Part shown: piece after piece, positions 3,052 to 38,992 of the stretch
Numbering within the stretch: the stretch's first letter is position 1
Layout: each line of letters opens with the position of its first letter
NCBI GenBank assembly: GCA_002269645.1
Contig: NIVC01003470.1
Span: 32,259 to 96,258, forward strand
Direction of reading: 5' to 3'
Origin: Macrostomum lignano
Lineage: Eukaryota
Length of the DNA stretch: 64,000 bases
Position numbers and translations under genes: made by a program
Notes under the pieces: model-generated
What the model saw: the letters and a program-made list of their open reading frames with translations, nothing else
Databases searched by the model: none
Told to the model about the DNA's origin: nothing

Positions 3052-4244
3052 GCACCGATCTCTGCCTGTGCTCGTCGAATCGCGCTGTCGTCATTGAACT
3101 CGACAGCGAGCGCAGAGCCACTGCACAGGCAAGGTCCTTTTCGACACGGTCGCCGACTAAGTGCGTCTGCATTTCCATGTTTCTCGCCCTTGCGATACTC
3201 AGTCTGGTAGTCGAATTCGCTTAGCTTATCCAGCCACCGTGCCAGCTGACCATCGGGATCTCGAAAGCGCAGAAGATGGATCAGCGAGGCGTGATCAGTA
3301 CGTAGTGTGAATCTTTTTCCTAACAAGTAGCTGCGATAGTGACCGACGAAGTGCACAATTGCCAGCAGCTCACGCCTCGTTGTGCAGTAATTTCTCTCTG
3401 CTTTGGACAGAATGCGACTGCCGTACGCCACCACCTGCGTCCTGCCACCACGGCGCTCTTGAAGAACTCCGGAGATGGCCACGCCAGAGGCATCGGTATC
3501 TAGCACGAACTCAGCGTCTTCTGCGAATGTCGGCATGATGAGGACTGGGCTGGAAGTAAGGCACTGCTTTAGGCGATTAAATGCTGCTGAGCATTCGAGA
3601 GTCCAGCTGAAGGTCACGTCCTTTTGCGTTAGCTTGTACAGCGGTTCAGCAATCTCACTGTAGTTTTTAACGAAATGACGATAGTAGCCACATAACCCCA
3701 GGAATTGTCGCACTTCTGAACGATCTTCGGGCGTTGGCCACTCCTGCACTGCTTTCACCTTGTCCGGGTCAGTGGTCACGCCATCTTTTGAGATTCGAAA
3801 GCCAAGAAATGAGATCTCCTGATAGCACAAGTGGCACTTGGTCGGCTTCAACTTCAGGTTAGCGGTTCTGAATTTCTGCAACACAAGCTCAAGACGCCGC
3901 AGATGCTCCTCGAATCCTTTCGAAAAGATGACAACGTCGTCAAGAAATGACAGGCACACTTCCCATCGGAGGCCCTTCAGAACGAGTTCCATCAGCCTTG
4001 AAAACGTGGCAGGACCATTGCACACACCTTGCGGTAGTCTCTTGTACTGGAATAATCCTTGTGGCGCAGGAAATGCTGTTTTTGCGCGACTCTCTGAGTC
4101 CAGCATCACCTGGGTGTACCCGCTAGTGAAGTCGAGCGTTGAGAACATTGTGGATCCTGCGAGAGCATCGATCAGATCGCTGGTGTGAGGCAGTGGATGA
4201 CTGTCTTTGACGGTCACGGAGTTGAGCAGTCTGAAGTCGTTCAC
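2943..4244 (-). CDS. Gypsy reverse transcriptase and RNase H (frameshift-bounded segment)
   Basis: FSTLDFTSGY, LPQGVCNGPATF, SFLDDVVIF, LDTDASG, RTDHASL, NADALSR. Confidence 0.92.
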   Translation of the reverse strand: MNDFRLLNSVTVKDSHPLPHTSDLIDALAGSTMFSTLDFTSGYTQVMLDSESRAKTAFPAPQGLFQYKRLPQGVCNGPATFSRLMELVLKGLRWEVCLSFLDDVVIFSKGFEEHLRRLELVLQKFRTANLKLKPTKCHLCYQEISFLGFRISKDGVTTDPDKVKAVQEWPTPEDRSEVRQFLGLCGYYRHFVKNYSEIAEPLYKLTQKDVTFSWTLECSAAFNRLKQCLTSSPVLIMPTFAEDAEFVLDTDASGVAISGVLQERRGGRTQVVAYGSRILSKAERNYCTTRRELLAIVHFVGHYRSYLLGKRFTLRTDHASLIHLLRFRDPDGQLARWLDKLSEFDYQTEYRKGEKHGNADALSRRPCRKGPCLCSGSALAVEFNDDSAIRRAQAEIGACRSWRTACEMGNHRIRQRRTAGAIGSGNCCPSLSG

Positions 4245-4882
4245 AGCGCAAACTGCCGTCCTTCTTCTTCACCAGAATGACCGGGCTCGACCACGGAGAA
4301 TAGAAAGCTCTACGATGTCGTCTCTCACCATCTGCTCGACCATCTCTGACACAGCTCGCTGGTTCGGCGGCGACAATCTACGAGGAGGCACTCTGATAGG
4401 TTTCGCCGACCCGGTGTCAATTTTGTGGTCAAGGAGTGAAGTGCAGCCCAGGTCGTTTGGACTTTTCGAGAACACATCCTGGTACTGATGCAGAAGATCT
4501 TTGACACACTGAACTTGATTGGCTGTAAGATTTTTCTCATCAATGTGCACATTTGGTACATACTCGGCGATTTGACCTTTCACTGTCTCAACTTGCATTG
4601 ACAACTCTGCATCGGCACCATCTGACATCGGCTCAAAAGTCCCCAGTCTTGTTCCGGGGTAAAATGTATGCGGCTTGGTGTCCGTATTGATATAGTGAAC
4701 AGCGATGAGTCCTCCTCGCAACACCGAGGCTGCGCGCTCCACACATGACCGTGGAGATGTCCTTCGAATTGTCAGGCTCAAAAATACCGCACTCACCATC
4801 AACAGCTGCATCTGACTCACTTGCCAATCTCGCTGGGAAGACGATTTCGTGACCAGCGGGCACGGTTGTCCTGTCTGCTACC

Positions 4883-5389
4883 TCAACGGCGAATACACAG
4901 GTGCTGGCTGCCGATGACTCCATTTTTACTTGCTGACCGCACACAGTGAGCGTTTGGCGATTGCAGTCGATGACGCAGCCACAGTTTGCCAGGAAATCTG
5001 CACCCAGCAAAAAAATCCTTGGCCAGATTGTCGACAACTAAAACTCTTTGTCGAACCGTTGCCACACCGAAACTTAGCTGCACTTCCTGCCAACCACAGG
5101 CAGCCAAATAGTTACCGTCTGCCAGCTTCAACTGCACCGGAGTCGTCAAAGGCAGGAGCCTCTCATTCAGCTTGCGAAACAGGGAACTTGACATCAAAGA
5201 CTGGGAACACCCAGTGTCAACTAGACAGCTGGCAGGGACACACATTGGCAGGATGCGACAGTTTACCAGCATGTTGGCACCAGTGGCTGAGCAGGACACC
5301 TCTACGACTGGTTGCGCCGGGATTCTCACTTGCGGAACGGCACCCCGGCGGTCGCCGCTCCATCGAAGTTTCCCGACTTCTGAGTGCAA
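4883..5389 (-). CDS. Aspartic protease segment in the -1 frame relative to gag
   Basis: LVDTGCSQS catalytic motif. Confidence 0.8.
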   Translation of the reverse strand: MHSEVGKLRWSGDRRGAVPQVRIPAQPVVEVSCSATGANMLVNCRILPMCVPASCLVDTGCSQSLMSSSLFRKLNERLLPLTTPVQLKLADGNYLAACGWQEVQLSFGVATVRQRVLVVDNLAKDFFAGCRFPGKLWLRHRLQSPNAHCVRSASKNGVIGSQHLCIRR

Positions 5390-6167
5390 AATCTTTGAAC
5401 ATGGCCCGGCTTACCGCACTTCCAGCATGTCACAACTCTGCGTCTGTCGCCGCTCTGACGATGATCCTGGTCCTTTGACTCCCAGCGGCTGAGCTTGTTG
5501 TACAGCTCCTTCAGGGACCGTTGAATTCCGACTGCAAAGGCTTCGGGAACCTCAGCAGCTAGAGCCGTAGCAGTGCCTCCTTGCGACTGTATCGATTCCA
5601 CGAATCGCGCTGTTTCAACTGTATCAGCGAATGTCGCCTTTGGCTGCATCTGCGTCTGCATTCGCACAGCTGGGTCCCTCAATCCGGATAGAAACCGACC
5701 TTTGAGAAGCTCGTCCTTCGCTGTCACCGACGTCTCCTGCTCGGCACCTGCTTTCGTCTCCATCAGACTCGGGAACGCACGCTTTGCCGCAACGATCAGG
5801 GCATCGGAATAGTCTGCAACCGACTGACCGTCCTTTTGAGTCAGATTGAAGAACTGCGCCTGCAGCTCAGCAGAGGATGTTGATGGCCGAAATCGATTTT
5901 TCAGAGCCTTCTCAAAGTCGTCGTAGGACAGGGCAGCATCCAAATTGCTGGCCGCTTGATATGATTTGTCGTCGAGGAATGACAGCAGAGCATTCTTGCG
6001 CTGATCCACAGGAAGAGATGATGCGAAATTGTTGAATCGTGCCAGCAAAGTTCAAAGTCTTGTCCATGCTGGTATTGAGGCGGCCGCAAAAACATGTTTA
6101 CAAAACTAGCTTGGGGCTGAGTCACCGCCACTGTAGGGCTCTCTGCACTGCCTTCATTTTCAGTCAT
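5326..6167 (-). CDS. Gag with CCHC zinc knuckle (one frameshift near 6048)
   Basis: CWKCGKPGHVQRFC; N-terminal MTENEG..QDFEL joins LARFNNF if one base is restored. Confidence 0.85.
5334..5374 (-). promoter_or_regulatory. Candidate programmed -1 ribosomal frameshift signal
   Basis: G GGA AAC slippery heptamer in the gag frame (5368-5374), 6-nt spacer, stem GGAGCGGC/GCCGTTCC. Confidence 0.75.
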
Positions 6168-9796: not shown

Positions 9797-11656
9797 ATGG
9801 CAGGCGCATATCCATGTGTGGTCTGTCTGCAGCCAGTTTGCGATGGACAAGAAGCAATTGAGTGTTCTCAATGCTTGAATTGGCAGCACCGTGCATGTGA
9901 CAGTCGCGTCACGATCAATCAGTATTCTGCAATGAGAAATGTTGGTGAGTTTTTCTGGCTTTGCAATCAATGCAATAGACGGGCTCCTGCAGGTAACTTA
10001 GCAGTGTCTCAAGCTGCAGATGCTGCAGTGGTACATGTACAAGCCCCGAATTCTGGACCAGCGGCTGTTCCTCTGCCTGCTGAAAATCCAGAACCAGTGC
10101 ATTTGATTCTGGCACAAGCAGAAAATTTTCTTTACCAGTATCCAGATTTCAATGACCCTGATCCAGCTCTGGAAGAATCCATTCAAATTCCTCCAGCAGA
10201 GCTTGCACCACCCCGCAGCCCACCTCCCCAGCCCTTTGAGATTCTTACAGGTGCAGGATGCAGTCACGGAAAAGACCTTCTAGTGCAGTATGCCCAACGA
10301 GACCTTGGCCATCTGATGGATGAAAAAACGCGGCGAAATGGCAACATATACTATCGCTGCACTAAGCATTTATCACTGCACTTTCATGGCTCCGCAGTCT
10401 GCCGTGCTGATGGAACCATACAAGCCCTTGCTCCGCACACGTGCGATCCAGTTGATCGGCCAGCTCAGAAGAGAAAGGCAGCAAAGGAGGTAAAGGAGGG
10501 AGCAAAGCGCATGTTGTTTACCTCTGCTAGAATTATCGCGGAGGAGAAGGTAAGAGAATTTTCACCTGAAGTGCAGGAGGTGCTTAGTATTGAGTCATTG
10601 AGTCGTAATGCTAATTACAGTCGCAAAAAAGATCGCCCTATGGAACCTGTTGACGTACATTTCCAAGTTGATCCTAGACATGTACCTGCCCAGTTTCATT
10701 TGCAGGATGTGACAGTTCCTGAGACAAACAGGCGACACTTCGTCTTCATGACAACAACTCAGCGAGAACTGTTATCAACCCGACGAATCTTGAAGTGCGA
10801 CGAAACTTTTAGCATTGTCAAGGCACCTTTCAAACAGCTTTACAGTGTACACGGCGCAATTTGCTTTGATGGGCAAGAAAGGCTGGTACCACTTGCCTTC
10901 TTTTTGATGTCCGGTAAGGCTCAAGCTGATTATCAAGCCTGCTTTCGTTGCCTTTGGGAGTCAACAGATAATGCGCCAATCAAGTTCACCTGTGACTTTG
11001 AAGCTGCTGCTTGGCAAGCAATTCGGCTGGTATATCCAGGTGCGCAAGTTTGCGGCTGCTTCTTCCATTATTGTCAAGCTGTCTTCAGGCATGTCCAAAA
11101 TCTTGGCCTTCAGGTGCAGTATTCCACTGTTCCAGCAGTTAAGTTGGTTGTACGCATGCTTCTCTTGATTCCATGCTTGCCATCCACTTGTATGCTTGAT
11201 GGTCTGGCAGCCTGCATTCAACTGGCAATAGGTAATGAGCTACTCCTACAGCTAGCCGAGTATGTGCGCACTACCTGGCTGCAGCATCTTGTCTGGGACC
11301 GTGATGCTATCTGCATCTTCGAGCAGTACAAGAGGACCAACAACGACGTAGAAGCCTGGCATGGTCAACTCAACAAGCGTGGACAGAAGCCGCTGAACTT
11401 CTACCTTCTGCTGGACCTGCTACAGCGTGATGCTGAACGGGTGCGACGGCTACAGCAGCAAGTTCACAGGGGCCAGGTTGTTACTCATCACCAGCAGGTG
11501 CATGCCAGGTACGCACGAGTGAATGCTGCCTTCGAGACGCATTGCAAACATCTTAGAGAAAGTACACTTTCAATTGCGGCCTTTCTAAGGGCCTGCAGCC
11601 ATCTGCACACTCAGCCTGTCTGGCAGGTACAGCAGCCTGCAGATGAGGAGGCTTAA
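9797..11656 (+). CDS. MULE transposase, 619 aa, with N-terminal PHD finger and FLYWCH-like zinc finger
   Basis: PHD CVVC..CSQC..HRAC..WLCNQC; YYRC..HTC; catalytic KCDETF, TCDFE, CFFH, TNNDVEAWH. Confidence 0.92.
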   Translation: MAGAYPCVVCLQPVCDGQEAIECSQCLNWQHRACDSRVTINQYSAMRNVGEFFWLCNQCNRRAPAGNLAVSQAADAAVVHVQAPNSGPAAVPLPAENPEPVHLILAQAENFLYQYPDFNDPDPALEESIQIPPAELAPPRSPPPQPFEILTGAGCSHGKDLLVQYAQRDLGHLMDEKTRRNGNIYYRCTKHLSLHFHGSAVCRADGTIQALAPHTCDPVDRPAQKRKAAKEVKEGAKRMLFTSARIIAEEKVREFSPEVQEVLSIESLSRNANYSRKKDRPMEPVDVHFQVDPRHVPAQFHLQDVTVPETNRRHFVFMTTTQRELLSTRRILKCDETFSIVKAPFKQLYSVHGAICFDGQERLVPLAFFLMSGKAQADYQACFRCLWESTDNAPIKFTCDFEAAAWQAIRLVYPGAQVCGCFFHYCQAVFRHVQNLGLQVQYSTVPAVKLVVRMLLLIPCLPSTCMLDGLAACIQLAIGNELLLQLAEYVRTTWLQHLVWDRDAICIFEQYKRTNNDVEAWHGQLNKRGQKPLNFYLLLDLLQRDAERVRRLQQQVHRGQVVTHHQQVHARYARVNAAFETHCKHLRESTLSIAAFLRACSHLHTQPVWQVQQPADEEA

Positions 11657-23546: not shown

Positions 23547-25005
23547 TACCATCACTAAAGCAAAATCAATTGCTTTCCTACTATAAGAAACGTTGATAGG
23601 CAAAAGCATTGACATTTTATATTTGTATACAAATTGCAAATTATAATATATAGCTTTATTTACAACCCAGTAGGGGGCGACCCAGTCCCAGGGCCCGGGC
23701 CCGACCCTAAAAAAGTCGGGAAATTGGGACAAGTCTTTTTTCCCTAAATCAGGATCAGGACAGCACAAGCACAACACTCAGTTAAGCATCAAATCAGCAC
23801 TCAAGACTCAAGCACTGCACGACTGCAGTAACAGTAATAGATGATATGATGTGAAGTAGCAATATCATTGATTCATAGTAGGCTCTTAGCGTGAGCGTTC
23901 GTGAGCATCAGCCACAGCCAGTTTCCACTTTCCAGAAAGATCGGATTTTTTTCCAGGAAGATAAAATTTAAACATAGTTTTGCAATACTTTTTTGCAATT
24001 TTGATTCCACTATACATGCTGTAGGCTGCAGCCTAAAAGCAAAAATATGATTCTTTAAAAAGTTGATTTGTCATTTTTAAGCTTTTGTAAATAAAATTTC
24101 CTATTTAAATTCCAAGAAGTACCTACCAAGGACCAAGACTACCATTTTTCCAAGAAGTTTGCTATCTATCAGAGTTTGTAATTGTGTTTGTATTTGTATC
24201 ATAGTTGTAGTCATAGACTCATAGTATCGTATTTATAATCATATTCATATAGGTAGGTAGGTGAACAGGTAGGCAGGTATCAGCTAATTACTTGTATTTC
24301 CAGTCTGTTTGCCTGTTCTGTTGAGTGTTGTATAACTTGTTGTGTTGTCACTTCACTTGTGTTCTGTTCTGTTGTCTTGTCTTGTTGTCATACTGAATAC
24401 TGACTGTGTACATGGCTCTTTACATTGAAGCTATGTAAAGGAACTAAAAATTCAAATAAAAGAACCAATTGATTTGGTTCTTACTTCCTTACTGCTTCCA
24501 ATGCCAAGTGCCTTACACTTAATGCTTCAGCTTTTCTTCTTTTTGCTTACTGCCACTGCCAGTGCCAGTGCCAGCTGCACTGCTGCAGTGCCTGCTTGCC
24601 TACCTCACTGCCTGTCACTATCACTGGCACACACACACACACACATAGTAATTGTGCCACACAGTGACATTGAATTTGAACTATTGAGTATATTGATATT
24701 TGAGTATTAAGTCTTGTCTATTCATAAGTCTTAATTAATGTATTAAATAATAATAATATTTATTATATTTAATATATTATATTATATTTAATATGTTTAT
24801 ATATTATAATATATTTGAATTTATTATATATATATTACATATTGCATATGCAAAAAGTTGCTAAGAAGCTTCTTACTTAATACTTATGCAACGAGTAGCT
24901 ACTTTTGACTATAGTTTGGAATATACTTCCTATCCATTAAGCAATACTTCCTGTGTATTGATATTTGCTTTTCTTTAGCTTGTCTCTGCACCTTTCTGCT
25001 TGTCA

Positions 25006-25397
25006 ATGTATCATCAACAGTCTCAGCAGTTTTTTGCACCTGGTACGTCCACTGGAGCTGGCATCTCAGCTGTTAGTGGTCCAATGGATGCAGCGGCACA
25101 GTTCTTTTCTGGACAGCACTCGCCATCCCAGTCGACAGGCCAGCTAGGTAATGTGCCTGCAATCGGAGAGTACTTTATGTACAACTGGGTAGTCATGGAT
25201 GGGACTAATCAGGCAGTAACCGGCGTTCATTTCGACAAGTACGAGGACTTGCTGTGGTGTGTTAACTGCGGCGGCCATCTTACAGGTTACTATGGACCGC
25301 AGCTCAGCAAGTATGTGTCGCTTCACGTCCAGAAAGATTTGCGACAGGTGTGTGCTGCTAGTCCTCTTGCTGAGGCTGGCGTCTTCACAATGGCAAA
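25006..25397 (+). CDS. PAN2: PAN2-like exon 1 (WD40)
   Basis: HFDKYEDLLWCVNCGGHLTGYYGPQLSKY matches the PAN2 N-terminus (EELLW..GGH..F.GP.L.RY); GT donor at 25398. Confidence 0.88.
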
Positions 25398-26005
25398 GTG
25401 AGAACTCTTTTGAAGTATATGTCATCTGATAAATTGCTGTATAATGTAGTTAGTAAGTTTGCACGTCTAGTTTAAAACGTGCTTGATTTAAGGAACTTAA
25501 GGAGCATATCAGCTACCAATTCAGTTGGTAACTATGTTAAGTAATGTCAAAAATATTAAACTTAACTTGAAGTGCCGTTTTTCATATAGCCAGATGTCAT
25601 TAAGTTGTCACTATGGTCACTAAGCATCTTTAATTATTAATTTGAATATGTTTTTGCTTATTAACACTAGCGACTACTGATACGTTCGTGCTCAAGCTTA
25701 ATAAGCTCAGGCAATTTTTTGTTGCATAGTACATTCTTTGCGTCTCATAAAACCCTAAGAAAAAGGACTTGCAGTTATAAGAATTATATTAAGTCCCTGT
25801 TAGGACTAACGGATAACTCACGGTAGACAAGAAGTCATAAGCTACTATTGCAGTTTTTATACTTCGTATCGGTGTAGTGAGTGGGGAGCAGTGGAAAACA
25901 CGCTAAGGGTAGAGTATGACGAATGAAATTCCTGACTAGAAAAATTCAGAGGGCAGAGAGCTTGGGAATTCTATCGAATATTCTATATATATTGACATCC
26001 TGCAG

Positions 26006-26417
26006 ATCAGGAGTCGCCTGTTACTCAAAGTTTGGACAGCGTCGTTGGTCATATTCATGTCCTGGAATGACCGTTGATTTAGCAGCCATGATTCACGACC
26101 CAGAGGCCGGGCGGCTGACCTTAGGTGGCCGGCAGGATCGTGTGTTGCAGTTGGATACTGGCACTGGCCGCTTAGTTAAGTGTGTCGACATGGGACCAGA
26201 TGGTTGCGAATTTCTAAGGCACAATGGTCGATTTATCTGCGCTGCGAGTGCCAAGGGCACAGTTACTCTACTGGATAGAGGAACGGGACGAAAAGAGCAC
26301 AGCCTCAGCACAGTTACCGGGCAGCTTGCTGATGTAGCAGTGCAGGATAGCCTGCTGGTCACTTGCGGCTGGTCAGTACGGCATGATGGAAATGTTATAC
26401 CTGATCGCCTTCTGCAG
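26006..26417 (+). CDS. PAN2: PAN2-like exon 2 (WD40)
   Basis: GGRQDRVLQLD..GTVTLLD..LLVTCGWS..DRLLQ; AG/GT boundaries in phase. Confidence 0.88.
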
Positions 26418-26508
26418 GTAAAGTGCACTGTAGTCCTAAAATAAGAGCCGATACAACTGCTCACATATCCTTGTCATTTTTAAGGCTAGTTATTACTTTT
26501 TGCTCTAG

Positions 26509-26894
26509 GCCTTTGATCTGCGAGTTTTGCGCCCAGTTCAGCCGTTCTGTGTCCAACTGGATCCACACTTTGTCCGCTTCCTACCGGCAATGCATGACCG
26601 ACTGTTAGTTGGCAATTCGCTTGGCGAATTCCAGTTCCTTCAACTGGGTCAGTCTATGCCATCATCGCCTGTCTACCAACTGGGAGTTGGTGCTACTGAT
26701 ATAGATATTAGTGCTAGCTCACGGTGCATCGCTGTCGGCGACGGGGCCGGGGGTGTCTACCTGCTGAGCGCCGACACTGCTGACGTCATCGGACCGCGTT
26801 TTAATGTCTCTCCGTTGCCGACTGTATTTCCAGACGATCCGGTTTATTCTCCTAATCCTATTGCACTTGGCAACGAGTCTTTTTTCTTCACAAG
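26509..26894 (+). CDS. PAN2: PAN2-like exon 3 (end of WD40)
   Basis: AFDLRVLRPVQPF..DPHFVRFLP..DISASSRCIAVGDGAGGVYL..PRFN; in phase. Confidence 0.88.
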
Positions 26895-27346
26895 GTCAGT
26901 ATATAGCAATGTTTAAACGGATATTTTTTTCTATTTGCTCACAATAAGCCTTCTTGATACTGTATCAAAATTTGTAATGCTAGTACGCTAGTATAACTGA
27001 TAAATTTACATCTCAGTTACTATGATTCGGCATAACAGATAATAGTATTCTTTTGTAATAAAAAACTACGAATAAAATTTGCCTGTCCTTTTTTATCAAC
27101 AGGGTGCTCGCACTATTGATTAGGCTAGATTTGCAGCAATAAATTGTACTTCCTGCTATTACTGCATCCTGAGGCGAGTGCTTGCACTTCTCACCATTGG
27201 TATCTGGTATAGTTTTTGCAGCAAGTCAAAGATGCTTGCAGCAGCCAAAGCACCAATTCGTAAATTAAATCTGTAGAGTTCCTGACGAAAGGATTTCTGT
27301 TTACATAATTTTTCCTAATGTTGGCTGTATTTTCTTAATTTCACAG

Positions 27347-27704
27347 CATGCCATTTGGATACCCGAAAGAGTCCGATGCCAGCTCCGCCGGATCTGGGTA
27401 TCGGTGCGCCCTTACCAGCGATTGGGCGCCTCGCCTCTGCCATTCATACGAGAGACGGGTGAAGCTCATTGATGAGGCAATTATTAGTGGCGCTTCTACA
27501 ACCCGTGGCCTTGCCATAGCCCGCAAGCCCGCTGGCTGGGGCAGGACCCACTTTCCTTACTACAGTCTGACAGAGCTTTCTGAGTTGGTCGAGCAGTCAG
27601 CAGCTAAATGCCAGTCGCTGAACAATGCCTGTGACATCACCTCAGGTTCTGCAAGTATTGCGGAGAAGGTCTCCACATTGGAAGCTGATGTTGGAAAAAA
27701 TTGA
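27347..27704 (+). CDS. PAN2: PAN2-like exon 4 (PAN3-binding linker) ending in a stop codon
   Basis: LTSDWAP..IDEAII..G..IARKP..RTHFPY resembles the PAN2 linker (LSDWP..VDAEIL..GFIGYAPNP..RNQIPY); exons total 1548 nt = 515 aa + stop. Confidence 0.8.
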
Positions 27705-28753
27705 TATTCCGAGTTTGATATTAAACTAAATAGTCAATTAAAACTTTAGCTCCTGCTATCTTAGATGATTTTAAACTTCGAAAGTATCCCAGTTTTTTTG
27801 AAGACAGGAATGTTTAGTCATATAGTCTGGTTTCCTACCAATCTCTAATGCCACTCTTGAATCACGCGAATATCACATCTTGCTTGGTGTCTTATTCTTT
27901 TTGTGCAGACCAAAGGCTTGCAACATTCAAGCGAAACACTGCGCTGTGGCAATAGCAAAAGCCAGTTTTTCAATCTAGTCTTACTGATTTCAAAATAACT
28001 TGGCATCTCGAGTCCATCTTGGGATGGCCTCGTCTCATTTATTGTACCACAGGAAGGCTAAGAGAAAACGTTATTCGATGTTGCGTTAATGCACGTTATT
28101 GCTGTCAATATATACCGTACTACGACCCGGTAGCATATGGGTGGATATCGTCTATGGCAACTCAGCCCATGAAATCTTGTTAGTGAACCGCTTTGCTGTC
28201 TGCCAAGCTTGTTTGACTGCACCCGTACTTGTCATTATTGCTTCAAAGGTGCTCCAAAAATGAGCAAAATGACAAAATGTTCCTGTCGATCCGTTTTCAC
28301 CCTTTTTCAAAATTTTGTTTCATTTTCTGTTGTAGTTTAAATAAACCTAATGCATTACTCTTCTTCAACAGATGTTACTTTATGCAGCTACTTATTTGCC
28401 TTTGTCTGTATTGCATAGAATTGGCTTTGGCGCAAACGTATCAAAAACTTGCATGCACGTCTATAAAAAGTTAGCAATGTGTGCGGCTTAATTTTCAAAA
28501 TGAAGGTAGCGAAAAACGGCCGGGCGTTGAAATATTCCGTTTGTTGGAGCCTGGCCGGTCATTGTAGCCGCTTTGCCTGCAAGCTCATTTCGGCCAATCG
28601 CTCACTTCGCCGCCCAATACAAGCGTATAGCTCATAACTCGTAACTGTCATTCACTTTTCCACTCATTTCAGAGGTTAATTTGGCAGATTTTTTCACAAG
28701 CACAGTGCAAGTACTGGCTATTTCTATTACATTAATTGCATTTCCCATCCCGC

Positions 28754-29168: not shown

Positions 29169-29536
29169 TTCCCATCCTGCATGTTTCGCTACAGGTAGAA
29201 AAACAGGATTTTGAGCACACTTTTCGATAAACTACTTAACTTTTGCATCTAGCACATTAGGTTGTATTGTTTATAATGTAATTTGTCTATTATACCTGGT
29301 CGAGAATTGTTTAAACTTCGAAACCTTGAAGCTCTATTCAAAAACCGAAACTCAAGTTTCCACAGTGCTATTCTAGTCTTGAATTTGCATTATTTTTGGG
29401 TACGCATCATAGTGGTCTCTTAGTTGGGAATTTGTTTCCTTATCCAAGAAAGAAAAGAAAGTATAGTTAAAACATCCTTTACATTACTAAATGCTTGGTA
29501 ATATTCTGAATTTTCCAGCACTTTCTGGCCTTTAAA

Positions 29537-29625
29537 ATGTCTGCTGAACAAGAGGCTCGATTGCAACGGATCAAGTCGGCCTTAGTAGACTATCCGGACT
29601 TTCCAAAACCTGGCATTGTCTTCAA
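29537..29625 (+). CDS. APRT: Adenine phosphoribosyltransferase exon 1
   Basis: MSAEQEARLQRIKSALVDYPDFPKPGIVF; GTGAGT donor. Confidence 0.92.
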
Positions 29626-30134
29626 GTGAGTCTTGATACTAAATCCCTTTATTTTTCGATCGTCGATCGCGCTGGTATCATTGCGTCTTCTTGTGACGAG
29701 TAATTCTGATATGCTGGTTGTCTTACCACGAGACATCTTCAGGGTTCGTTTAACTTCCAAGCAGTGGAGCTGAGCATCAACTCAGTTGTGAGAAGTCCTT
29801 GAGTGTATCTTCCGTTGTCGTTCTTTGTGAACATTGACTAATTTGACTATTGATTTTGATTAAACTGGACTAGGTTGAACTGACCTTAGAGCTTGTGTTT
29901 TTGATAATAAATAATTCTATTGTATTTAATATATCTGGTTGTGTTTGTGATAAATGAGCCGTAAAGATGTCGAAACGCGTGACGTGTGACAACAAAATGC
30001 GTTGACTTTTACAATTAGCTAGTCTGTGTTTAAAATTCCTTTCTTTTTCTTTCTTCTTACAACGAGCAACCCTTGCACAATCTTACCATGACGAACCGCA
30101 ACTACTGCAAGTGAATAAACCTGATTTCATAATA

Positions 30135-30363
30135 AGATTTTCCCGGCATTATTTGCGTTCTCCGGGATTTCATTTGGCAACATTCAATAATATCCCGTAA
30201 AATATTGTCTATGTTTTATCAGGCCCTCGTGATTTATACAAATAGCTCCCTCAAAAGGCATGTGTAATCTCGTATAAACCATAGACATAAAGACTTTACG
30301 GGATATTATTGAATATTACCAAATAAAATCCCGGAGAACGCAAATATTGTCACGGAAAGTCTT
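30135..30363. mobile_element. Foldback/MITE in APRT intron 1
   Basis: ~85-bp inverted arms (atttgcgttctccgggattt..taatatcccgtaaa and its reverse complement). Confidence 0.75.
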
Positions 30364-30442
30364 TATTTCTATGGATTATAAGCAAGTAATAGATTGTATC
30401 CAGGAATTGCCAATTTTTTATTACCTTCAAACAAATTTGTAG

Positions 30443-30515
30443 AGATATTATGGGAATTCTGGCATCGCCGTCTATCTTTGCTGATACAATCGATTCTATG
30501 GTCGATATTGCCAAG
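30443..30515 (+). CDS. APRT: APRT exon 2
   Basis: (K)DIMGILASPSIFADTIDSMVDIAK; AG/GT in phase with exons 1 and 3. Confidence 0.85.
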
Positions 30516-31022
30516 GTACATGCTTACTTCTATTTTTCCTCGATATTTTCCACTATCATTGTAATTCTTACGCTCCTATGACACTGATTAAAGTAGCTCT
30601 AAAAATTGCTTGATCTAAGACTGACTAGGCGTACGTATGGGCGGCATGTAGAAGACTTTCATTAATATAACAGTCACTGTCAGCTTATACGCTCGTGCTG
30701 TGGAACGTTTAAAGAATTGCTTGGCTGCCAAGTAATTTTGATGCAAATCAGCTTTCGCGCATAAAATGAGCCATCGAATCACGTAAAGGATGTACAAAAT
30801 TGGCAAAAGGATGTGATTACACAATATTGGCTTCATTTGATTTCGATCTTCAGACTATGAGGGTTATTCCAGAAGTCCTCAGTATTTGTTTGTAGCATGT
30901 GGTGCCACTAATCACAGAGCGATCAAAATCGAGTGCAGGTTTTCCAAATAATTGAAAGATCTAGAAACTGCTCATTTTTATCTTGTTGATAATTGATTCC
31001 CATACTGCTTCCTGAGTTGCAG

Positions 31023-31415
31023 GGCTTGCCTCAGGTGGATCTTGTCGTTGGTCTAGAGTCGCGCGGCTTTTTGTTTGGACCCTGCATTGCCCAGCGCCTT
31101 GGTGTCGGCTTCGCACCGATCCGTAAGGCTGGAAAACTACCCGGTCGAGTTGAATCTGAGAGCTATACCAAGGAGTACGGGCAGGATCGCTTCGAAATCC
31201 AGGCGAATGCAGTTCCACCCGGTGCCCAAGTCATGCTGGTTGACGACCTAGTAGCTCTAGGCGGCACCATGGCTGCTGCTGTTCGCCTTATCCAGCGGGT
31301 TGGTGGCAATGTCACTGGCTGCTTGGTCGTGGTTGAACTCTCTTTTCTTAACGGCCGCGCTCGACTACCCGAGGGAACGCTGCTTAAGTCGTTAGTTTGC
31401 ATCGACTCAGAATAG
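31023..31415 (+). CDS. APRT: APRT exon 3
   Basis: VVGLESRGFLFG, IRKAGKLPG, YTKEYG, PRPP loop VDDLVALGGT, VVVEL..LNGR. Confidence 0.95.
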   Translation, partial: GLPQVDLVVGLESRGFLFGPCIAQRLGVGFAPIRKAGKLPGRVESESYTKEYGQDRFEIQANAVPPGAQVMLVDDLVALGGTMAAAVRLIQRVGGNVTGCLVVVELSFLNGRARLPEGTLLKSLVCIDSE

Positions 31416-32879: not shown

Positions 32880-35800
32880 CTATTGTTGTTGTATGCTGTG
32901 AGCCTCTCCTAAAGGGGACACCAACCGATGGCCCCTAGGAGAAGCGCCACCACGTCGGCGCGAGCGAGTTGACACATTTCGGTAATGCCGTGAGTACGGC
33001 GTTGGACGTCCAGGGCCGGGCAGTTGAGAAGTTTGAATTGATCTACCTCTTCCGCGCAGAGACGGCAGTTGCCGGCCCCGACCTCAATGCCGGTGCGGTC
33101 GCGGTAGTAGATCGATGCAGGACAGTGGCCGGCGCGGACCTGCGAGACTAGGACCTGTGTTGCCTGCGAGGGCCCTCATGCGTCGTAATCTTTTGGCCAT
33201 AGACCTCGAGCAGGTGGCCTGTCATGTTGGGCGAATAGTTAACAACCCGTCGGATGCGGGCCCTAGCCGAATCCAGGGTGGTGCCGACATGCTCCTGAGG
33301 CAGCGTGGCCGCTAGTTTGGCCTCGGCATCCACCAGTTCATTTCCGGGGATTCCGGCGTACCCGGGCACCCACTGCAGGATGATCTTAGAAAGACGGGCG
33401 GCGATGATAAGGCGTTCCTTAACGTTCTCGACGAGCGGGTTGATGGTTGGGCGATCAGCTTGCAGGACCGCGATAGCGCTCTGGCTGTCGGTGAGAATTG
33501 CAGCCTCTTTCGGGGCATTGGCAATGATATCGCTTAGAGCCTGGAAGATGGCGATAAGTTCGGCCTCAAAGGAAGGCCGAGGGCTGCACCAGCGGCCCGC
33601 GGCCACGCGCCCGCGCCGGCTGATGGAGCCGTCCTGGCTCAGGAGAATCCAGGCTGCACCTCCGTTTTCAACGCCACCAGAGACGGATCCGTCGGTGAAG
33701 TAAGTGGCGGCGTTCGGGCAGCGCGCGGTCGCGGTGGCTTGGACCCGCCTGGGCGGCGTCGGTTTCAATGGGCTCGAACAGCAGCTTGTTGAACATGCGC
33801 ACTCCGGCGTCGGCCAACGAATTCCAGGGTGGGAGCCGGATGTGGCTGTTGGCTAGACGGTGTCCACCAAGGAGCTCATCGGTGATGCGTCTAGCTTTTT
33901 CGCGGAGGCCTCGGTTGGCAGAAAGCCGGGTGTCCTGGCGGCGTTCGCAAAGCTGCCGGAAGGGGTCGCCGGGAGGTCTGCGGAGCGCCTTCTCAACCGC
34001 AAGCAGCGATCTTCTGCGGGCTTCGAGGCTGATAGGAAGGATTCCCGACTCAAAGTAGATGGCCTCTACCGGTGTCGAGCGGGGGAGATCAGTGACAACC
34101 CGGAGGGCCTCACGCTAGGCACGGTCGATGGCGTTGAGACGGGTCGCAGATAGCCAGGGCGTCCAGGCCGCGGCGGCATGCCACACGACGGATTCGACAA
34201 GAGCCCAGTAGACTCGCAGCAGCAGCTTGCGATCCCAGCCCCATTCACGGTGGGCTAGGGCACGAAGGATGGCAGCTCGGCGAAGCATTTTCTCCCGGAC
34301 GGAGTCAGTTTGCTTTTCGAATAGCAGACCTTGGTAAATCCAGATTCCGAGAAACTTAATCTCCTGCTTGAAAGGAATCTGTTGGCCCCGGAGGGTGAGG
34401 CTGAGGTTGCGTTGACGGTCGGATCTGTCCCGAGAGAAGAGGCATCCCTCAGTTTTAGAAAGGTTGATGTCGATGCGTAGATGAGCGGCCCATTCCTCGA
34501 CGAGCTGCAGGGCGGATTGGAGGCGAGCCTGGATTTCCGGGAGGTTCCGGCCCGTGCTCCAGAGGGCGAGATCATCTGCATAGCCACTGTAGTCGACGAG
34601 AGGCACGTTGTGACCGGACCACTTGTTAACATAGATGAGGAAGAGGGCAGGCGAGCTGACGGCGCCCTGGGGGACGCCTTCCCTCAGTCTGCGCCATTTC
34701 CCAAGCGAGGAGCCGACCCGCACAGCGATCTGCCTGCCTTCGAGGAAGCTGGTGAACCAGCGCACCATACAGGCAGGGACGCCTTCGTCCATCATGCGAC
34801 CAATAAGGCAAGCGCGCCAAACACGGTCGAAGGCGCGAGAGCAGTCAATGAGGATGGCCACAGTTTTCAAGTGCGGGCGTTTCTCCCATCCATCTTGAAT
34901 TGACTGAACGAGGCGTGCGATTTGCTCTTCACAGCCACGACTACGTTGAAAACCGGCTTGCCAGGGCTGAATGATGTTGTGGAGCTCGAGCCAGCGATAG
35001 AGGCGATCAAGGATAAGCTAGCCGTTCGAGGATCTTCCCGCAGATGGAGGTGAGGCTGACAGGCCTGTAGCTACCGCGGTCTTTGGGGTCCTTTCCGTCC
35101 TTTAGCAGGGGGACGATAACGGCCTTTTTCCAGACTCGGACAGCCTGACTCCAGGACAGTGTCCGGTGTGCCAGCAACGGTTGAAGACGGCCAGCCAGGC
35201 CGTCATCCAAGAGTCCGGCAGGTAGATGAAGAAGGCAGCTTCGATTTCGGCGGGACCACATTTTTGCTGGGGTCAAGTTTGCCAATGGCCCGTTTCAGCT
35301 CACCAGGGGTGAAGTCACGGCAGTAAAGGTCGTCGTCTGTGGAGTAATGAGCCAGGCGACGGGACGTGGCCACTTTGACCTTGCGGTCCACCGCCGAGTG
35401 TTTCAGAGTGCTGATGTTTTCGTAATAGCGGCCAAAGGCGTTAGCCTTTTCCTTGTCCGTGCGCAGGTCTCGACCATCAACAACGAGAGATTCGTTGGGA
35501 GGATCTTGTTGTTTGCCGTTGCTGAGGCACTTGACAGTCCTCCAGACTTGTTTTGGGTCGGCAGAGTCGGACATTTTGTTGATGTACTCCTTCCAGAATT
35601 CGGCTTTCTTTTCGGCACAGAGTTTGGACAGTTCGTGACTTTTTTCGAGCCACTCGCCAGGATGGGCGCCAGATTCCCTAAGCCGGTTCCGAGTGTCGCG
35701 AAGTTCAGTAAATTCTTCATCCCAGTATGGCTTGTTTTTGGCAGAAACTTTTTGAGCGGGATAGCAGCTTTGGCTGCTTTAAGCATGCCCGAGCTGAGCC

Positions 35801-37410
35801 TGGCAATCTGTTTCTTGATGGAGCCGCCATTGAGGTGGTCGGCGTCCTCGGAGAGCAGGGTCTGGTAAGCGGTCCAGTCCGCTTTTTTCCGAGACCAGCT
35901 GAAGCGAGGCGCAGTGCTCAGGGTTTCCCGGGATTCCCGGACTGTCACCAGGATGGGTTGGTGATCGGAGCCAAACTCGGTGAGCGGTTGCCATTTACAG
36001 AGGTCGGCCACTGATTGACTAGCGATGGTGAGATCGGGAGCACTAGTCCGTCCGGTGCGCCTGTCAACGCAGGTGTGTTCCCCTGAGTTCAGGATGCGGT
36101 AGTCCACGGAGTTGCACCAGTCGAACAGGCACTGAGCTTGTGCTGCACCTTCAGGTCCTTGATTGGGATCGCTGCCCCAGGCAGTGTGGTGGAGGTTGAG
36201 GTCACCAAGCAGAATTTCCCTGTGGAAGCATCTGAGCCAGGAATCGACACTGGGGTGCTCACGGTGATCTTCGCCTTCCACGCGCCGGATGGGGGGGCGG
36301 TAGATGTTGGAGACGACAAGTTTTTTTCTGGCCGAGGTGCTGATCGAAATTCTGCAGCCTTCGGTGGTTCCGCCAGACCATCCTTGAAGTTTATTGAACG
36401 GAATGCCTTGCCGGAAAAGAAGAGCAGGCCGCCGCCTTTAACGTTCGGGTCGCAGCGGGCAGTTTTATGGTCCTTGCGGATGGTTTTGTTGAAGGAGGTG
36501 AGCTTCGACTCTTGAACCGCAATAACGTCGGCCTGAAGCCGGGATGCGAGGTCCTCAAGCTCCCCCATTTTGTTGCTGATCCCATCCGCATTCCATTGAA
36601 TAATTTTGAGCTCAGGTTTCTTGCAGTCCCACCCAGCTTCCGGGTGGCTCCCTCCAACAGGAGTGGGGTCAGGGTCCTCAGGGGAGGGCGGGCCTTGGAG
36701 GCAGGCGGCTTCGGTGCAGCGACCGCATCTCCAAAGCCCACGACCGATTTCTTTTTTGATCTGGTCGCGCGTGGCTTGCAAGCAGGCGTTATGGAAGAAT
36801 CCTTCACAGGCATTGCAGCAGGCGATGGTGGAGCTGACGCGCATCGTTTTCCGACAATGGTTGCATTTAGGTTTCTCCTGCCGGATACAGTTGAGCAGGG
36901 CTTGCCTGCGAGCGGTTTGCTCCTCCGTGGGCTGGCAGATAGGGGTGGACGGTTGGTCAGAGGACGACGAGTCTGTCTGGGTGGTGGGGCCGTTCTCGCA
37001 ATTGGCGTAGTGCCATTCCTGGGCGTCCGCGGCCTTGTTCGCGGCCCAACGACTCAACCCGGAGCATTCCCTCTGCAGATGGAAGCGGCTGTTACATCTC
37101 GCGCAGGTGAGGAACTTGCCGCGCAGAGGGCGGCCGCAGCTGACGGGCAGCAGGAGGCCCCGGGTTGGTCTCAACATCGCCGGCCCTGAGCAACAGAAGA
37201 GCGGGGAGGTAGCGGGCCGGATACTTGGCTCCTCCGGTGTTAAAACCGATACGCGCTCATCTTCCAGTACAATGACGCTCGCTGGACACGGTGTCCGAGT
37301 TATGGCGCTCTTCGTACACCCCTATTGGGCGTGTTTCCCCTCCGCGACGAAAACGCGGCGCCAAGTAGGAGCTACGACAAAGTCGTAGACCAGACGTAGA
37401 GTCCGGTGGG
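32880..37410 (-). mobile_element. Full-length Ingi-like non-LTR retrotransposon (PHD-PHD-APE-RT-RNase H-CCHC), frameshifted
   Basis: 11-bp TSD TACTGGTGACG (32869-32879, 37411-37421); (CAA)n tail; IIQWNADG/AVQESKL, LLGDLNLHH, GVPQGAVSSP, GYADDL, YFTDGS; 5' end begins CCC. Confidence 0.93.
37304..37410 (-). ncRNA. HDV-like self-cleaving ribozyme at the LINE 5' end
   Basis: P1 CCCACC/GGAGGG, P2 GGCGC(C)/G(A)GCGCC, P3 GCG/CGC, L3 TTTTCGT, P1.1 TT/AA, P4 ACACGCCC/GGGGTGT, J4/2 ACGAA. Confidence 0.78.
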
Positions 37411-37887: not shown

Positions 37888-38656
37888 ATGCATCGTATCA
37901 TCATGAAAGGCTGGCGTGAATTGCTATACCTTTTTGCGTTTGTCGTCTCTCTTGGTTTGATCGTAGCGTTGCACTTATTATCCGCTCCACTTGAACTCGT
38001 CTGTTTAAATCCCTCAACTCGCAGTAAGCAGCAGCTCGAAGCGAGCTCACATTTGCCTGGGGTTAAAAAAAACTCTGGAGTCCTAAAGACTCCAGCTATC
38101 CGATCAGTTCACCTTGCCAAGTTCAATTACGTTCACTGGGCCAAGTCATGCAAAGACATGCAGCTGCAGCCCCTGTTGCTCGGTGCGGTTATTTCGGCAC
38201 CTAGCAATTTTACCAGACGAGAGCTCCTCCGACGGCTCTACATGTCGCAGAATGAGATCCATGGGTTCCCTTTGCGCTGGATCTTTATTCTTGGCTACGT
38301 ACCGAGCATAAAAATTCAGCGAGAAATTGATAATGAAAGCAATCGATACGGAGACATCGTGCAACTCAGTTTCCGAGACTCTTACGAAAATCTGACGCTG
38401 AAGGCAATTGCGGCGATGGATTGGACAGCAACGGCTTGTCCAGAGGCCAAATTCTTTTTCAAGACGGACACAGACTGCATGGTGAATCCATTTCGAATTG
38501 GTGACTATCTTTTATCTCTCTCGCTGGTTGATTCGCAGATTCTATACACTGGCAGCGTACCTCGCTGGTTGGAGCCTAACCGACATAGTGGAGTTAAGAA
38601 GTGGCGCGTTAGCTACCAAAACTATCCTCTGATCAAGTTTCCTCGGTACGCGAATG
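37888..38656 (+). CDS. GT31 beta-1,3-galactosyltransferase-like, exon 1
   Basis: N-terminal TM helix; ISAPSNFTRR, ESNRYGDIV, DSYENLTLK, FFKTDTD (DxD), FPRYAN; GTAAGA donor. Confidence 0.92.
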
Positions 38657-38992
38657 GTAAGAAAGTATGATTTTCTCTAGCCAGCTTTTCATTCCCATTT
38701 GGTCTAGAGAAGTTTCTTCGGGCTGTTTCTCCAGTGTTGCTACTCGTACATGTGCATTGTATATCAGAGACCCAGACAAACCAAGCAATTTATATTTTTG
38801 GCCATTATTACGCAGTTGCTCCCCAATGTACAGTACACCCCGTGTACAAATTTCATCACGGGACTGCTTTCTCGCATTTATTATCTATCTCAGCTACTTA
38901 CTGAACAATCTACCATTGTTTCTTAAACGGGCAGTAAAAAAACCTTGGATTATGCCTGTCCAGTCTCATGTTTAGACTTCATAAAATTTCAG

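What the first reader, a model, noticed from the sequence alone, without database searches (positions are those of the whole stretch)
25006..27704. PAN2 homolog cut down to its PAN3-binding half: a possible nuclease-dead deadenylase decoy
Seen: four exons with canonical, in-phase splice sites give an uninterrupted 515-aa protein (WD40 + linker + ~35-aa tail) ending TGA at 27704, followed by ATTAAA signals. APRT starts 1.8 kb later and I recognise no UCH-like or DEDD exonuclease ORF downstream. Known: PAN2 is ~1100-1200 aa; its WD40 and linker bind PAN3, while the UCH and DEDD domains are C-terminal. Inference: an intact paralog that keeps the PAN3 interface but lacks catalysis could titrate PAN3 or scaffold GW182-linked deadenylation.
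Basis: partly seen in the sequence, partly recalled or inferred. Interest (0 to 1): 0.7.

Follow-up and report, generated by a model that had tools for sequence, protein, structure and literature searches.

The report
Flatworm PAN2 lacking its nuclease half
This is a real, expressed and conserved Macrostomum lignano gene for a PAN2 protein that stops right after its PAN3-binding part, and the same short form is the only PAN2 form found in flukes and tapeworms, so it is the flatworm version of PAN2 and not a recent decoy copy.

Summary
Four GT-AG, in-phase exons (25006-25397, 26006-26417, 26509-26894, 27347-27704) give a 515-aa protein. It has a PAN2_N WD40 propeller and the PAN3-interacting linker, then a 47-aa tail, TGA and two ATTAAA signals. 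APRT starts 1.8 kb downstream. No UCH or PAN2 exonuclease coding sequence exists anywhere in the 64 kb.

The window is Macrostomum lignano contig NIVC01003470.1. The gene is GenBank PAA51285.1, a transcript-derived model with the same stop. Two other contigs carry the same gene, same stop and same APRT neighbour. Against them the coding sequence differs by 0.52% and non-coding sequence by 2.7% (pN/pS 0.11).

The interpretation needs changing. The same short architecture occurs in trematodes, a cestode and an unnamed transcript. It is marked by a derived linker motif, RKPxxWGxxxxPY. All 21 proteins carrying the motif end 0-76 residues after it. They form one clade with the M. lignano protein.

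So this is the flatworm ortholog of PAN2, shortened before Macrostomorpha and Neodermata split. It is not a paralog sitting beside a full-length PAN2; none was found.

I could not resolve whether a separate UCH-exonuclease gene, or PAN3, exists in flatworms. The most likely role is a nuclease-free subunit that binds PAN3 and poly(A)-PABP.

The parts
25006..25397 (+). Exon 1. ATG at 25006. Codes a disordered N-terminal stretch of about 55 aa and the first blades of the WD40 propeller. Donor AAA|gtgaga.
   Evidence: (tblastn to PAN2 residues about 35-130)
26006..26417 (+). Exon 2. WD40 blades. Acceptor ctgcag|, donor CAG|gtaaag.
26509..26894 (+). Exon 3. Last WD40 blades plus the CS1-like segment FNVSPLPTVFPDDP. 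Acceptor ctctag|, donor AAG|gtcagt.
   Evidence: (aligns to the N. crassa WD40-CS1 chain 4czy_A up to aa 380)
27347..27704 (+). Exon 4. Second half of the PAN3-interacting linker, the 47-aa tail and the TGA stop (27702-27704).
   Evidence: Against the homeolog it has 2 differences where 9.8 are expected at the non-coding rate (P = 0.003).
27522..27560 (+). Codons for RKPAGWGRTHFPY (aa 456-468). This is the flatworm-type version of the canonical GYAPNPGxxRRNQVPY that ends the linker just before the UCH domain.
27561..27701 (+). Species-specific C-terminal tail (aa 469-515). It replaces the UCH-like and exonuclease domains. Two helices are predicted at low confidence.
27720..27742 (+). Two ATTAAA poly(A) signal candidates (27720-27725 and 27737-27742), 16 and 33 nt after the stop. 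Conserved in all three copies.
   Evidence: Use as actual poly(A) sites was not tested.

Best explanation
The locus encodes the Macrostomum lignano ortholog of a naturally short, flatworm-wide form of PAN2. It consists of a seven-bladed WD40 propeller, the CS1/PID linker that wraps around the PAN3 dimer in canonical PAN2, and a short non-conserved tail. The UCH-like and DEDD exonuclease domains are not part of the polypeptide.

The shortening happened once, before Macrostomorpha and Neodermata diverged. The remnant has been kept under purifying selection since then.

Shown: the gene structure, the real stop, three genomic copies, selective constraint, the clade-wide architecture, the PAN2-type propeller fold, and sequence homology through the whole linker.

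Inferred: the protein still docks on a PAN3 dimer through its linker. Through its WD40 domain it would recognise oligomerised poly(A)-binding protein on long tails, as yeast Pan2 does. On this reading, flatworm PAN2-PAN3 is a poly(A)-RNP-binding module with no nuclease of its own in this subunit. Any catalytic activity would have to be supplied in trans or has been lost.
For: - Gene model and domains.
- Identity with GenBank PAA51285.1 (517 aa, 5'-partial, same C-terminus).
- Mlig_3_7 gene models are built only from RNA-seq and transcript assemblies, with experimentally supported ends: PMC5730564.
- Three contigs show PAN2_N followed by APRT, with the same stop.
- Constraint: 8 of 1548 coding differences against 2.73% in introns and flanks (P = 1.4e-10); 6 synonymous and 2 non-synonymous, pN/pS 0.107.
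- No UCH or exonuclease coding sequence in the 64 kb or in the sister loci.
- The flatworm-profile search returned 17 proteins, all from trematodes or a cestode. Sixteen carry PF20770 (the 17th has no Pfam hit) and none carries PF13423 or PF00929.
- In Clonorchis the next gene downstream is a convergent Brix gene. No UCH or exonuclease lies within 10 kb in Clonorchis or Schistosoma. In Sparganum no further gene is called downstream.
- All 21 proteins with [RQK]KPxx[WML]G...PY end 0-76 aa after the motif.
- An uninterrupted Logan contig has its TGA directly after ...WGPVWYPY.
- NJ bootstrap of about 100% for the short-form clade including M. lignano.
- AF2 propeller with pLDDT above 90 for aa 58-378, and best Foldseek hits to PAN2 WD40(-CS1)/PAN3 structures.
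- C. thermophilum Pan2 WD40-PID (1-458) binds Pan3, whereas UCH-Exo without the linker does not: PMC4158885.
- The WD40 domain reads the Pab1-Pab1 interface of long poly(A) RNPs: PMC6547884.
Against: - PAN3 binding was not tested. The linker is only 25-32% identical to other PAN2s and is modelled at low confidence.
- The end of the linker is remodelled in flatworms, which could mean a changed partner.
- I could not check whether flatworms have PAN3, or a separately encoded UCH-exonuclease protein.
- The protein searches are limited. The word index has low sensitivity (one search found only the query's own cluster). The exhaustive search lists only 150 of 450 hits.
- One of the three copies (L003) has a 1-bp deletion in a G run.
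Confidence: 0.75

Rival explanations
1. Gene fission. The UCH-like and exonuclease half survives as a separate flatworm gene elsewhere in the genome. It joins the PAN2-N/PAN3 complex in trans, so flatworm PAN2-PAN3 is still an active deadenylase made of three gene products.
For: The break lies exactly at the linker/UCH domain boundary, where a split would leave two foldable units. In yeast the UCH-like domain itself touches the knob of one PAN3 protomer (PMC6547884). The N-half has stayed conserved for a very long time. Nothing here excludes a C-half gene, because the relevant search was truncated.
Against: No flatworm protein appeared among the 120 best C-half hits, though this is weak evidence. 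No such gene lies next to the N-half in M. lignano, Clonorchis or Schistosoma. In C. thermophilum, UCH-Exo without the linker did not pull down Pan3 (PMC4158885).
Confidence: 0.3
2. This is a nuclease-dead paralog that coexists with a full-length PAN2 and titrates PAN3 or scaffolds GW182-linked deadenylation as a decoy.
For: The protein keeps the PAN3-binding half and lacks catalysis. M. lignano is a recent polyploid with many duplicated genes (abstracts listed).
Against: All three copies are the same short gene at 97-99% nucleotide identity, so they are homeologs or alleles rather than a short/long pair. No other PAN2_N protein of M. lignano was found. The short form is shared with trematodes and a cestode, and groups with them rather than with canonical PAN2.
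Confidence: 0.07
3. Artefact. The true gene continues into distant or unassembled UCH and exonuclease exons, and the TGA belongs to a retained intron, a minor isoform or a misassembly.
For: Split PAN2 models do occur in other genome annotations, for example N-only and C-only models on one Solemya velum chromosome. Exon 4 contains GT dinucleotides that could serve as donors (CAG|GTTCTG near 27644).
Against: Three independent contigs agree through the stop and into APRT. The model is transcript-derived. There are 36 kb downstream and 25 kb upstream without any PAN2 C-half signal. More than ten independently annotated flatworm genomes, and one uninterrupted Logan contig with 137 nt of 3' sequence, stop at the homologous place. 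In Clonorchis the next gene is convergent.
Confidence: 0.03
4. A decaying remnant: a pseudogene fragment of PAN2 that is transcribed but has no function.
For: It lacks the catalytic half. One copy (L003) carries a 1-bp deletion.
Against: The 515-codon frame is intact in two copies. Coding divergence is 5-fold lower than non-coding, with pN/pS 0.11. The protein is conserved across flatworm classes. The deletion sits in a homopolymer of a PacBio-era assembly, and that copy is otherwise identical in its exons to the intact L002 copy.
Confidence: 0.02

Closest known systems
Canonical PAN2 (USP52), catalytic subunit of the PAN2-PAN3 deadenylase (human 9qtu; yeast 6r5k; N. crassa and C. thermophilum WD40-CS1/PAN3 complexes 4czy and 4d0k)
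   Same: Homologous PAN2_N WD40 propeller (Pfam E 2e-36; Foldseek TM 0.82-0.83 normalised to the fungal WD40 chains). Homology continues through CS1 and the whole PAN3-interacting linker, including the SDW(P/A) tryptophan and the terminal PY.
   Different: It ends 47 aa after the linker, with no UCH-like domain and no DEDD exonuclease. The last linker motif is remodelled, from GYAPNPGxxRRNQVPY to IARKPAGWGRTHFPY.
Trematode and cestode 'PAN2 N-terminal domain-containing proteins' (e.g. Clonorchis sinensis 629 aa, Calicophoron daubneyi 629 aa, Schistosoma spp. 642-676 aa, Sparganum proliferum 612 aa)
   Same: Same architecture (PF20770 only), same termination point, same derived motif RKPxxWGxVWxPY, and one clade in the NJ tree.
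   Different: Only about 30% identical. The neodermatan proteins have an insertion of about 90 aa in the linker that M. lignano lacks. Their tails share a (R/Q/E)(L/F)GRF motif that is absent here (visible for the six trematodes aligned). Their upstream neighbour is ELP4, whereas in M. lignano the conserved neighbour is APRT downstream.
Engineered Pan2 WD40-PID fragment (C. thermophilum residues 1-458; Wolf et al. 2014)
   Same: The natural flatworm protein has the same boundaries as the laboratory fragment that is sufficient to bind the Pan3 pseudokinase/C-terminal dimer (PMC4158885).
   Different: That fragment is an experimental truncation. This is a naturally evolved, selected gene product, and its binding to PAN3 is untested.

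Membership tests
PAN2 (PAN2-PAN3 deadenylase catalytic subunit) | N-terminal PAN2-type WD40 propeller (PF20770) | tested here: met
   Pfam E 2.1e-36, 126 bits against a cut-off of 26.6. AF2 propeller with pLDDT above 90. Best structural matches are PAN2 WD40 chains.
PAN2 (PAN2-PAN3 deadenylase catalytic subunit) | Linker (CS1/PID) between WD40 and UCH that binds the asymmetric PAN3 dimer | tested here: inconclusive
   Sequence homology to the linker of full-length PAN2 extends to aa about 469-471. Binding itself is not testable here. The model of this region has low confidence.
PAN2 (PAN2-PAN3 deadenylase catalytic subunit) | UCH-like (USP) pseudo-protease domain (PF13423) | tested here: not met
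   Absent from the protein. Absent from the whole window and the sister loci by tblastn and HMM.
PAN2 (PAN2-PAN3 deadenylase catalytic subunit) | C-terminal DEDD (RNase T-type) exonuclease domain with catalytic residues (PF00929) | tested here: not met
   Absent. The only faint similarity lies in an ORF I read as the RNase H-like end of a LINE-like element, at 33148-33768 on the minus strand.
Flatworm short PAN2 (WD40 + linker only) | PF20770 as the only PAN2 domain, with the protein ending 76 aa or fewer after the linker motif [RQK]KPxx[WML]Gx(3-5)PY | tested here: met
   The motif is at aa 456-468 with 47 residues after it. All 21 motif-bearing proteins end 0-76 residues after the motif.
Flatworm short PAN2 (WD40 + linker only) | Groups with trematode and cestode short PAN2 to the exclusion of canonical spiralian, arthropod and deuterostome PAN2 | tested here: met
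   NJ on 432 columns with 200 bootstraps gives about 100% support for the clade. This is a simple distance method, and long-branch effects are not excluded.
Dominant-negative / decoy paralog of an enzyme | Coexistence in the same genome with a full-length, catalytically competent paralog | tested here: not met
   No other PAN2_N protein of M. lignano was found. No flatworm-like full-length protein is among the best 150 of 450 exhaustive hits. The M. lignano genome itself could not be searched, so this is absence in the deposited proteome only.

The most novel reading that the evidence does not exclude
Flatworms as a clade have lost the PAN2 nuclease altogether, yet have kept the PAN3-docking and PABP-sensing half for hundreds of millions of years. 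Their 'PAN complex' would then be a non-catalytic reader or organiser of long poly(A)-PABP RNPs, for example handing mRNAs to CCR4-NOT or protecting long tails, rather than a deadenylase.
Probability: 0.4. Interest if true: 0.75.

Novelty: new variant of a known kind. Interest (0 to 1): 0.6.

Why it matters
PAN2-PAN3 is treated as a conserved eukaryotic deadenylase in which PAN2 supplies the nuclease and PAN3 supplies RNA and PABP binding. A whole animal phylum in which PAN2 is reduced to its PAN3-binding and poly(A)-RNP-sensing half would be a natural separation-of-function allele.

It would show whether the WD40-linker module has a role of its own. Either way, flatworm poly(A) shortening would be organised differently from the textbook two-phase model. 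That includes the stem-cell and germline mRNAs for which planarians, Macrostomum and schistosomes are studied.

M. lignano is a transgenic, RNAi-amenable, free-living laboratory model, so the question can be tested directly.

It also has a practical consequence. Database names such as 'poly(A)-specific ribonuclease' given to these flatworm proteins are misleading, because they contain no nuclease domain.

Tried and rejected
1. Looking for the missing half in the window. tblastn with 8 full-length PAN2s and an HMM of the UCH-exonuclease half found nothing. Faint minus-strand hits at 33.2-33.6 kb lie in a LINE-like ORF with an RNase H-like end.

2. Looking for a separate C-half gene in M. lignano. 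A profile search of the 5.8-billion protein set gave 615 hits, but only the best 120 are listed. These came from arthropods, molluscs, annelids, vertebrates and other non-flatworm animals, so the result is inconclusive.

3. Exact look-ups of the spliced 515-aa product and of the exon-4 ORF in assemblies.

4. Supplementary tables of five M. lignano papers, searched for PAN2, PAN3 and the gene identifiers. Four had no occurrences and one had no files held.

5. Literature searches for flatworm PAN2/PAN3 or USP52 found nothing relevant.

6. Checking whether divergent full-length proteins in the hit list could be flatworm PAN2. P0011 is closest to insect PAN2. P0042 is from a horsehair worm and P0030 from a nematode. 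P0086 is not on record as a called gene.

7. tRNA and Rfam scans of 24-32 kb. There are no tRNAs, and only one sub-threshold MIR2630-like hairpin, in the APRT intron.

8. A Biopython bootstrap tree timed out. It was replaced by my own NJ and bootstrap script.
Full report
**Observation**

Each acceptor ends in AG and each donor starts with GT. The pieces join in phase to 1548 nt, giving 515 codons plus TGA at 27702-27704.

Pfam finds PAN2_N (PF20770) over aa 69-353 at E 2.1e-36. The best solved-structure relatives by sequence are human PAN2 (9qtu_C) and the fungal PAN2 WD40 and WD40-CS1 chains. Two ATTAAA hexamers follow the stop at 27720 and 27737. APRT is called at 29519-31415.

**Origin and reality of the gene**

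The protein is 100% identical to GenBank PAA51285.1. That entry is 'hypothetical protein BOX15_Mlig003889g1, partial' of Macrostomum lignano. It is 517 aa, starts two codons upstream of the ATG, and has the same C-terminus. The window is the last 64 kb of contig NIVC01003470.1 of assembly GCA_002269645.1.

Gene models of that assembly were built only from RNA evidence: StringTie and de novo transcripts, cut at trans-splice and poly(A) sites that were determined experimentally (PMC5730564). The stop at 27704 therefore reflects an assembled transcript, not an ab initio guess.

Two further contigs carry the same gene, 97-99% identical in DNA. Both have the same exon structure, the same stop and APRT as downstream neighbour. 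This excludes a local misassembly.

**Selection**

Against the L002 copy, the coding sequence has 8 differences in 1548 sites (0.52%). Introns and flanks have 86 in 3153 (2.73%), so P(8 or fewer) = 1.4e-10. Six differences are synonymous and two are not (A31P, H429R), giving pN/pS = 0.107.

Exon 4 alone has 2 differences where 9.8 are expected (P = 0.003). The 47-aa tail on its own is too short to judge.

The third copy (L003) has a single-base deletion in a G run at codon 349. This explains the 355-aa GenBank model PAA71674.1. That copy is otherwise identical in its exons to L002, so a homopolymer assembly error is as likely as a real lesion.

**Is the rest of PAN2 nearby?**

No. tblastn with eight full-length PAN2 proteins hits only exons 1-4. 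A profile of the UCH-exonuclease half, searched against all six frames of the window and of the two sister loci, gives nothing better than E = 4.4.

Weak minus-strand matches at 33.2-33.6 kb fall in an ORF that reads as the RNase H-like end of a LINE-like element occupying 33.1-37.2 kb. I judged this from the ORF translations; no domain search was run on them.

**How far does homology go?**

An exhaustive phmmer search of 1.84 billion representatives gives 450 hits. The best non-self hits are full-length PAN2s, for example a cephalopod protein of 1228 aa. They align from query aa 57 to 471.

In a local alignment, the M. lignano protein follows canonical PAN2 through the following elements:
- the CS1-like segment (FNVSPLPTVFPDDP against FNxYSRxTEFADP);
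- the SDW(P/A) motif;
- the IDxxI stretch;
- the terminal ...PY that precedes the UCH domain in canonical PAN2.

It then diverges into its own tail. Identity in the linker (25-32%) is about the same as in the propeller (31-34%).

AlphaFold2 gives a confident propeller (aa 58-378 of the 517-aa numbering, pLDDT mostly above 90). The N-terminus, linker and tail have low confidence, as expected for a segment that orders only on its partner. Foldseek puts human PAN2-PAN3 (9qtu_C) first, followed by the PAN2 WD40 domain (4czv) and the WD40-CS1/PAN3 complexes (4d0k, 4czy).

**The decisive finding: the short form is not peculiar to this locus**

Among the phmmer hits were short proteins that end where this one does. 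I looked at these three:
- P0021, from Calicophoron daubneyi, 629 aa;
- P0051, 582 aa;
- P0016, 440 aa.

They share with it a derived version of the last linker motif, RKPxxWGPVWxPY. Here it reads RKPAGWGRTHFPY, and in canonical PAN2 it is YAPNPGxxxRNQVPY.

A profile of these sequences retrieved 17 proteins, all from flatworms: Clonorchis, Paragonimus, Heterobilharzia, several Schistosoma, Dicrocoelium, Opisthorchis, Fasciola, Echinostoma and the cestode Sparganum. The complete ones are 610-680 aa. Sixteen carry PF20770 and the 17th has no Pfam hit. Two are annotation fusions with the upstream ELP4 gene. None has PF13423 or PF00929.

All 21 proteins in hand that carry the motif end 0-76 residues after it.

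In Clonorchis, in two independent assemblies, the gene order is ELP4, then PAN2_N, then a convergent Brix gene. In Schistosoma and Sparganum it is ELP4 then PAN2_N, with no further gene called downstream. The Clonorchis and Schistosoma loci contain no UCH or exonuclease signal.

P0016 comes from a 1484-nt Logan contig with an uninterrupted ORF. Its TGA lies directly after ...WGPVWYPY and is followed by 137 nt of 3' sequence.

A neighbour-joining analysis (432 columns, 200 bootstraps) joins M. lignano, P0016, the cestode and the trematode proteins in one clade with about 100% support, apart from canonical PAN2 of molluscs, annelids, a brachiopod, a nemertean, an insect, deuterostomes and a coral. 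Other spiralians have full-length PAN2. The shortening is therefore a shared derived character of at least the rhabditophoran flatworms.

The three M. lignano copies are the same short gene.

No other PAN2_N protein of the species was found by the word-indexed search. None of the proteins of 900 aa or more in the exhaustive hit list resembles the flatworm type. Those I could name are from a cephalopod, insects, crustaceans, a nematode, a horsehair worm, an ascidian and an amoebozoan.

These are absences in deposited proteomes. I could not search the M. lignano genome itself.

**Mechanism**

Established knowledge:
- In C. thermophilum, Pan2 WD40-PID (1-458) binds the Pan3 pseudokinase/C-terminal dimer. 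Removing UCH-Exo does not impair binding, while removing the linker abolishes it (PMC4158885).
- In yeast, the WD40 domain recognises the second Pab1-Pab1 interface and thereby long poly(A) RNPs. The UCH-like domain touches the knob of one Pan3 protomer (PMC6547884).

The flatworm protein has the boundaries of that WD40-PID fragment. My best reading is therefore a nuclease-free subunit that docks on a PAN3 dimer and helps it recognise long poly(A)-PABP particles.

The open question is whether a nuclease is supplied in trans (gene fission, about 0.3) or was lost (about 0.4 for the strong version). The remodelling of the last linker motif, which in canonical PAN2 leads into the UCH domain, fits the loss of that neighbour. 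This point is inference.

**Novelty**

The sequences are in public databases under automatic names. Some are misleadingly called 'poly(A)-specific ribonuclease'.

I found no paper that mentions PAN2 in Macrostomum and none describing a shortened flatworm PAN2. The one planarian paper I opened cites PAN2 only in its reference list.

I rate it a new variant of a known kind. It would surprise specialists if the nuclease is truly absent, and it is directly testable in a tractable laboratory flatworm.

Noticed in passing
window 1483-6048 (minus strand): Run of GC-rich ORFs with gag/zinc-knuckle, reverse transcriptase, RNase H and integrase domains: an LTR retrotransposon of the Ty3/gypsy type. The frames are split between ORFs. 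Its ends were not mapped.
   Followed up: partly
window 9797-11656 (+): A 619-aa ORF with a MULE transposase domain (E 3.8e-12), so a Mutator-like DNA transposon gene or a domesticated copy.
   Followed up: no
window 33148-37177 (minus strand): GC-rich (0.53-0.57) LINE-like element. I read its ORFs as endonuclease-like, reverse-transcriptase-like and RNase H-like from their translations; no domain search was run. Its RNase H-like ORF caused the only faint 'exonuclease' tblastn hits in the window. The element is also present in both sister loci, at about 99% identity.
   Followed up: partly
window 30130-30368 (+), inside the APRT intron: A 240-nt perfect-looking hairpin (MITE-like inverted repeat). 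It matches Rfam MIR2630, a plant miRNA family, at 71 bits, below the gathering score of 144. The other two copies of the locus differ from the window by indels at or just after 30219, so this element is probably polymorphic between homeologs.
   Followed up: partly
L003 (NIVC01001148.1), codon 349 of the PAN2_N gene; equivalent to window about 26750: A one-base deletion in a GGGGCCGGGGG run truncates the annotated protein to 355 aa (PAA71674.1). The rest of the coding sequence is identical to the intact L002 copy. It is either a homopolymer assembly error or a very recent inactivation of one of three copies.
   Followed up: partly
L004, L005, L006, L008 (Clonorchis, Schistosoma, Sparganum): ELP4 (PAXNEB) lies immediately upstream of the short PAN2 gene, on the same strand, in trematodes and a cestode. 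Two GenBank models (Opisthorchis, Fasciola gigantica) fuse the two genes. This microsynteny is not seen in M. lignano, where no gene is called in the 10 kb upstream.
   Followed up: partly
window 37888-38670 (+) and 50729-51373 (minus strand): A galactosyltransferase (PF01762) ORF, probably one exon of a beta-1,3-galactosyltransferase-like gene, and a separate reverse-transcriptase fragment.
   Followed up: no
window 24622-24640 and 24740-24850: A (CA)n microsatellite and a block of AT-rich low-complexity sequence lie directly upstream of the PAN2_N start. The GenBank CDS is marked 5'-partial and begins at 25000. The promoter or trans-splice status of the gene was not determined.
   Followed up: no
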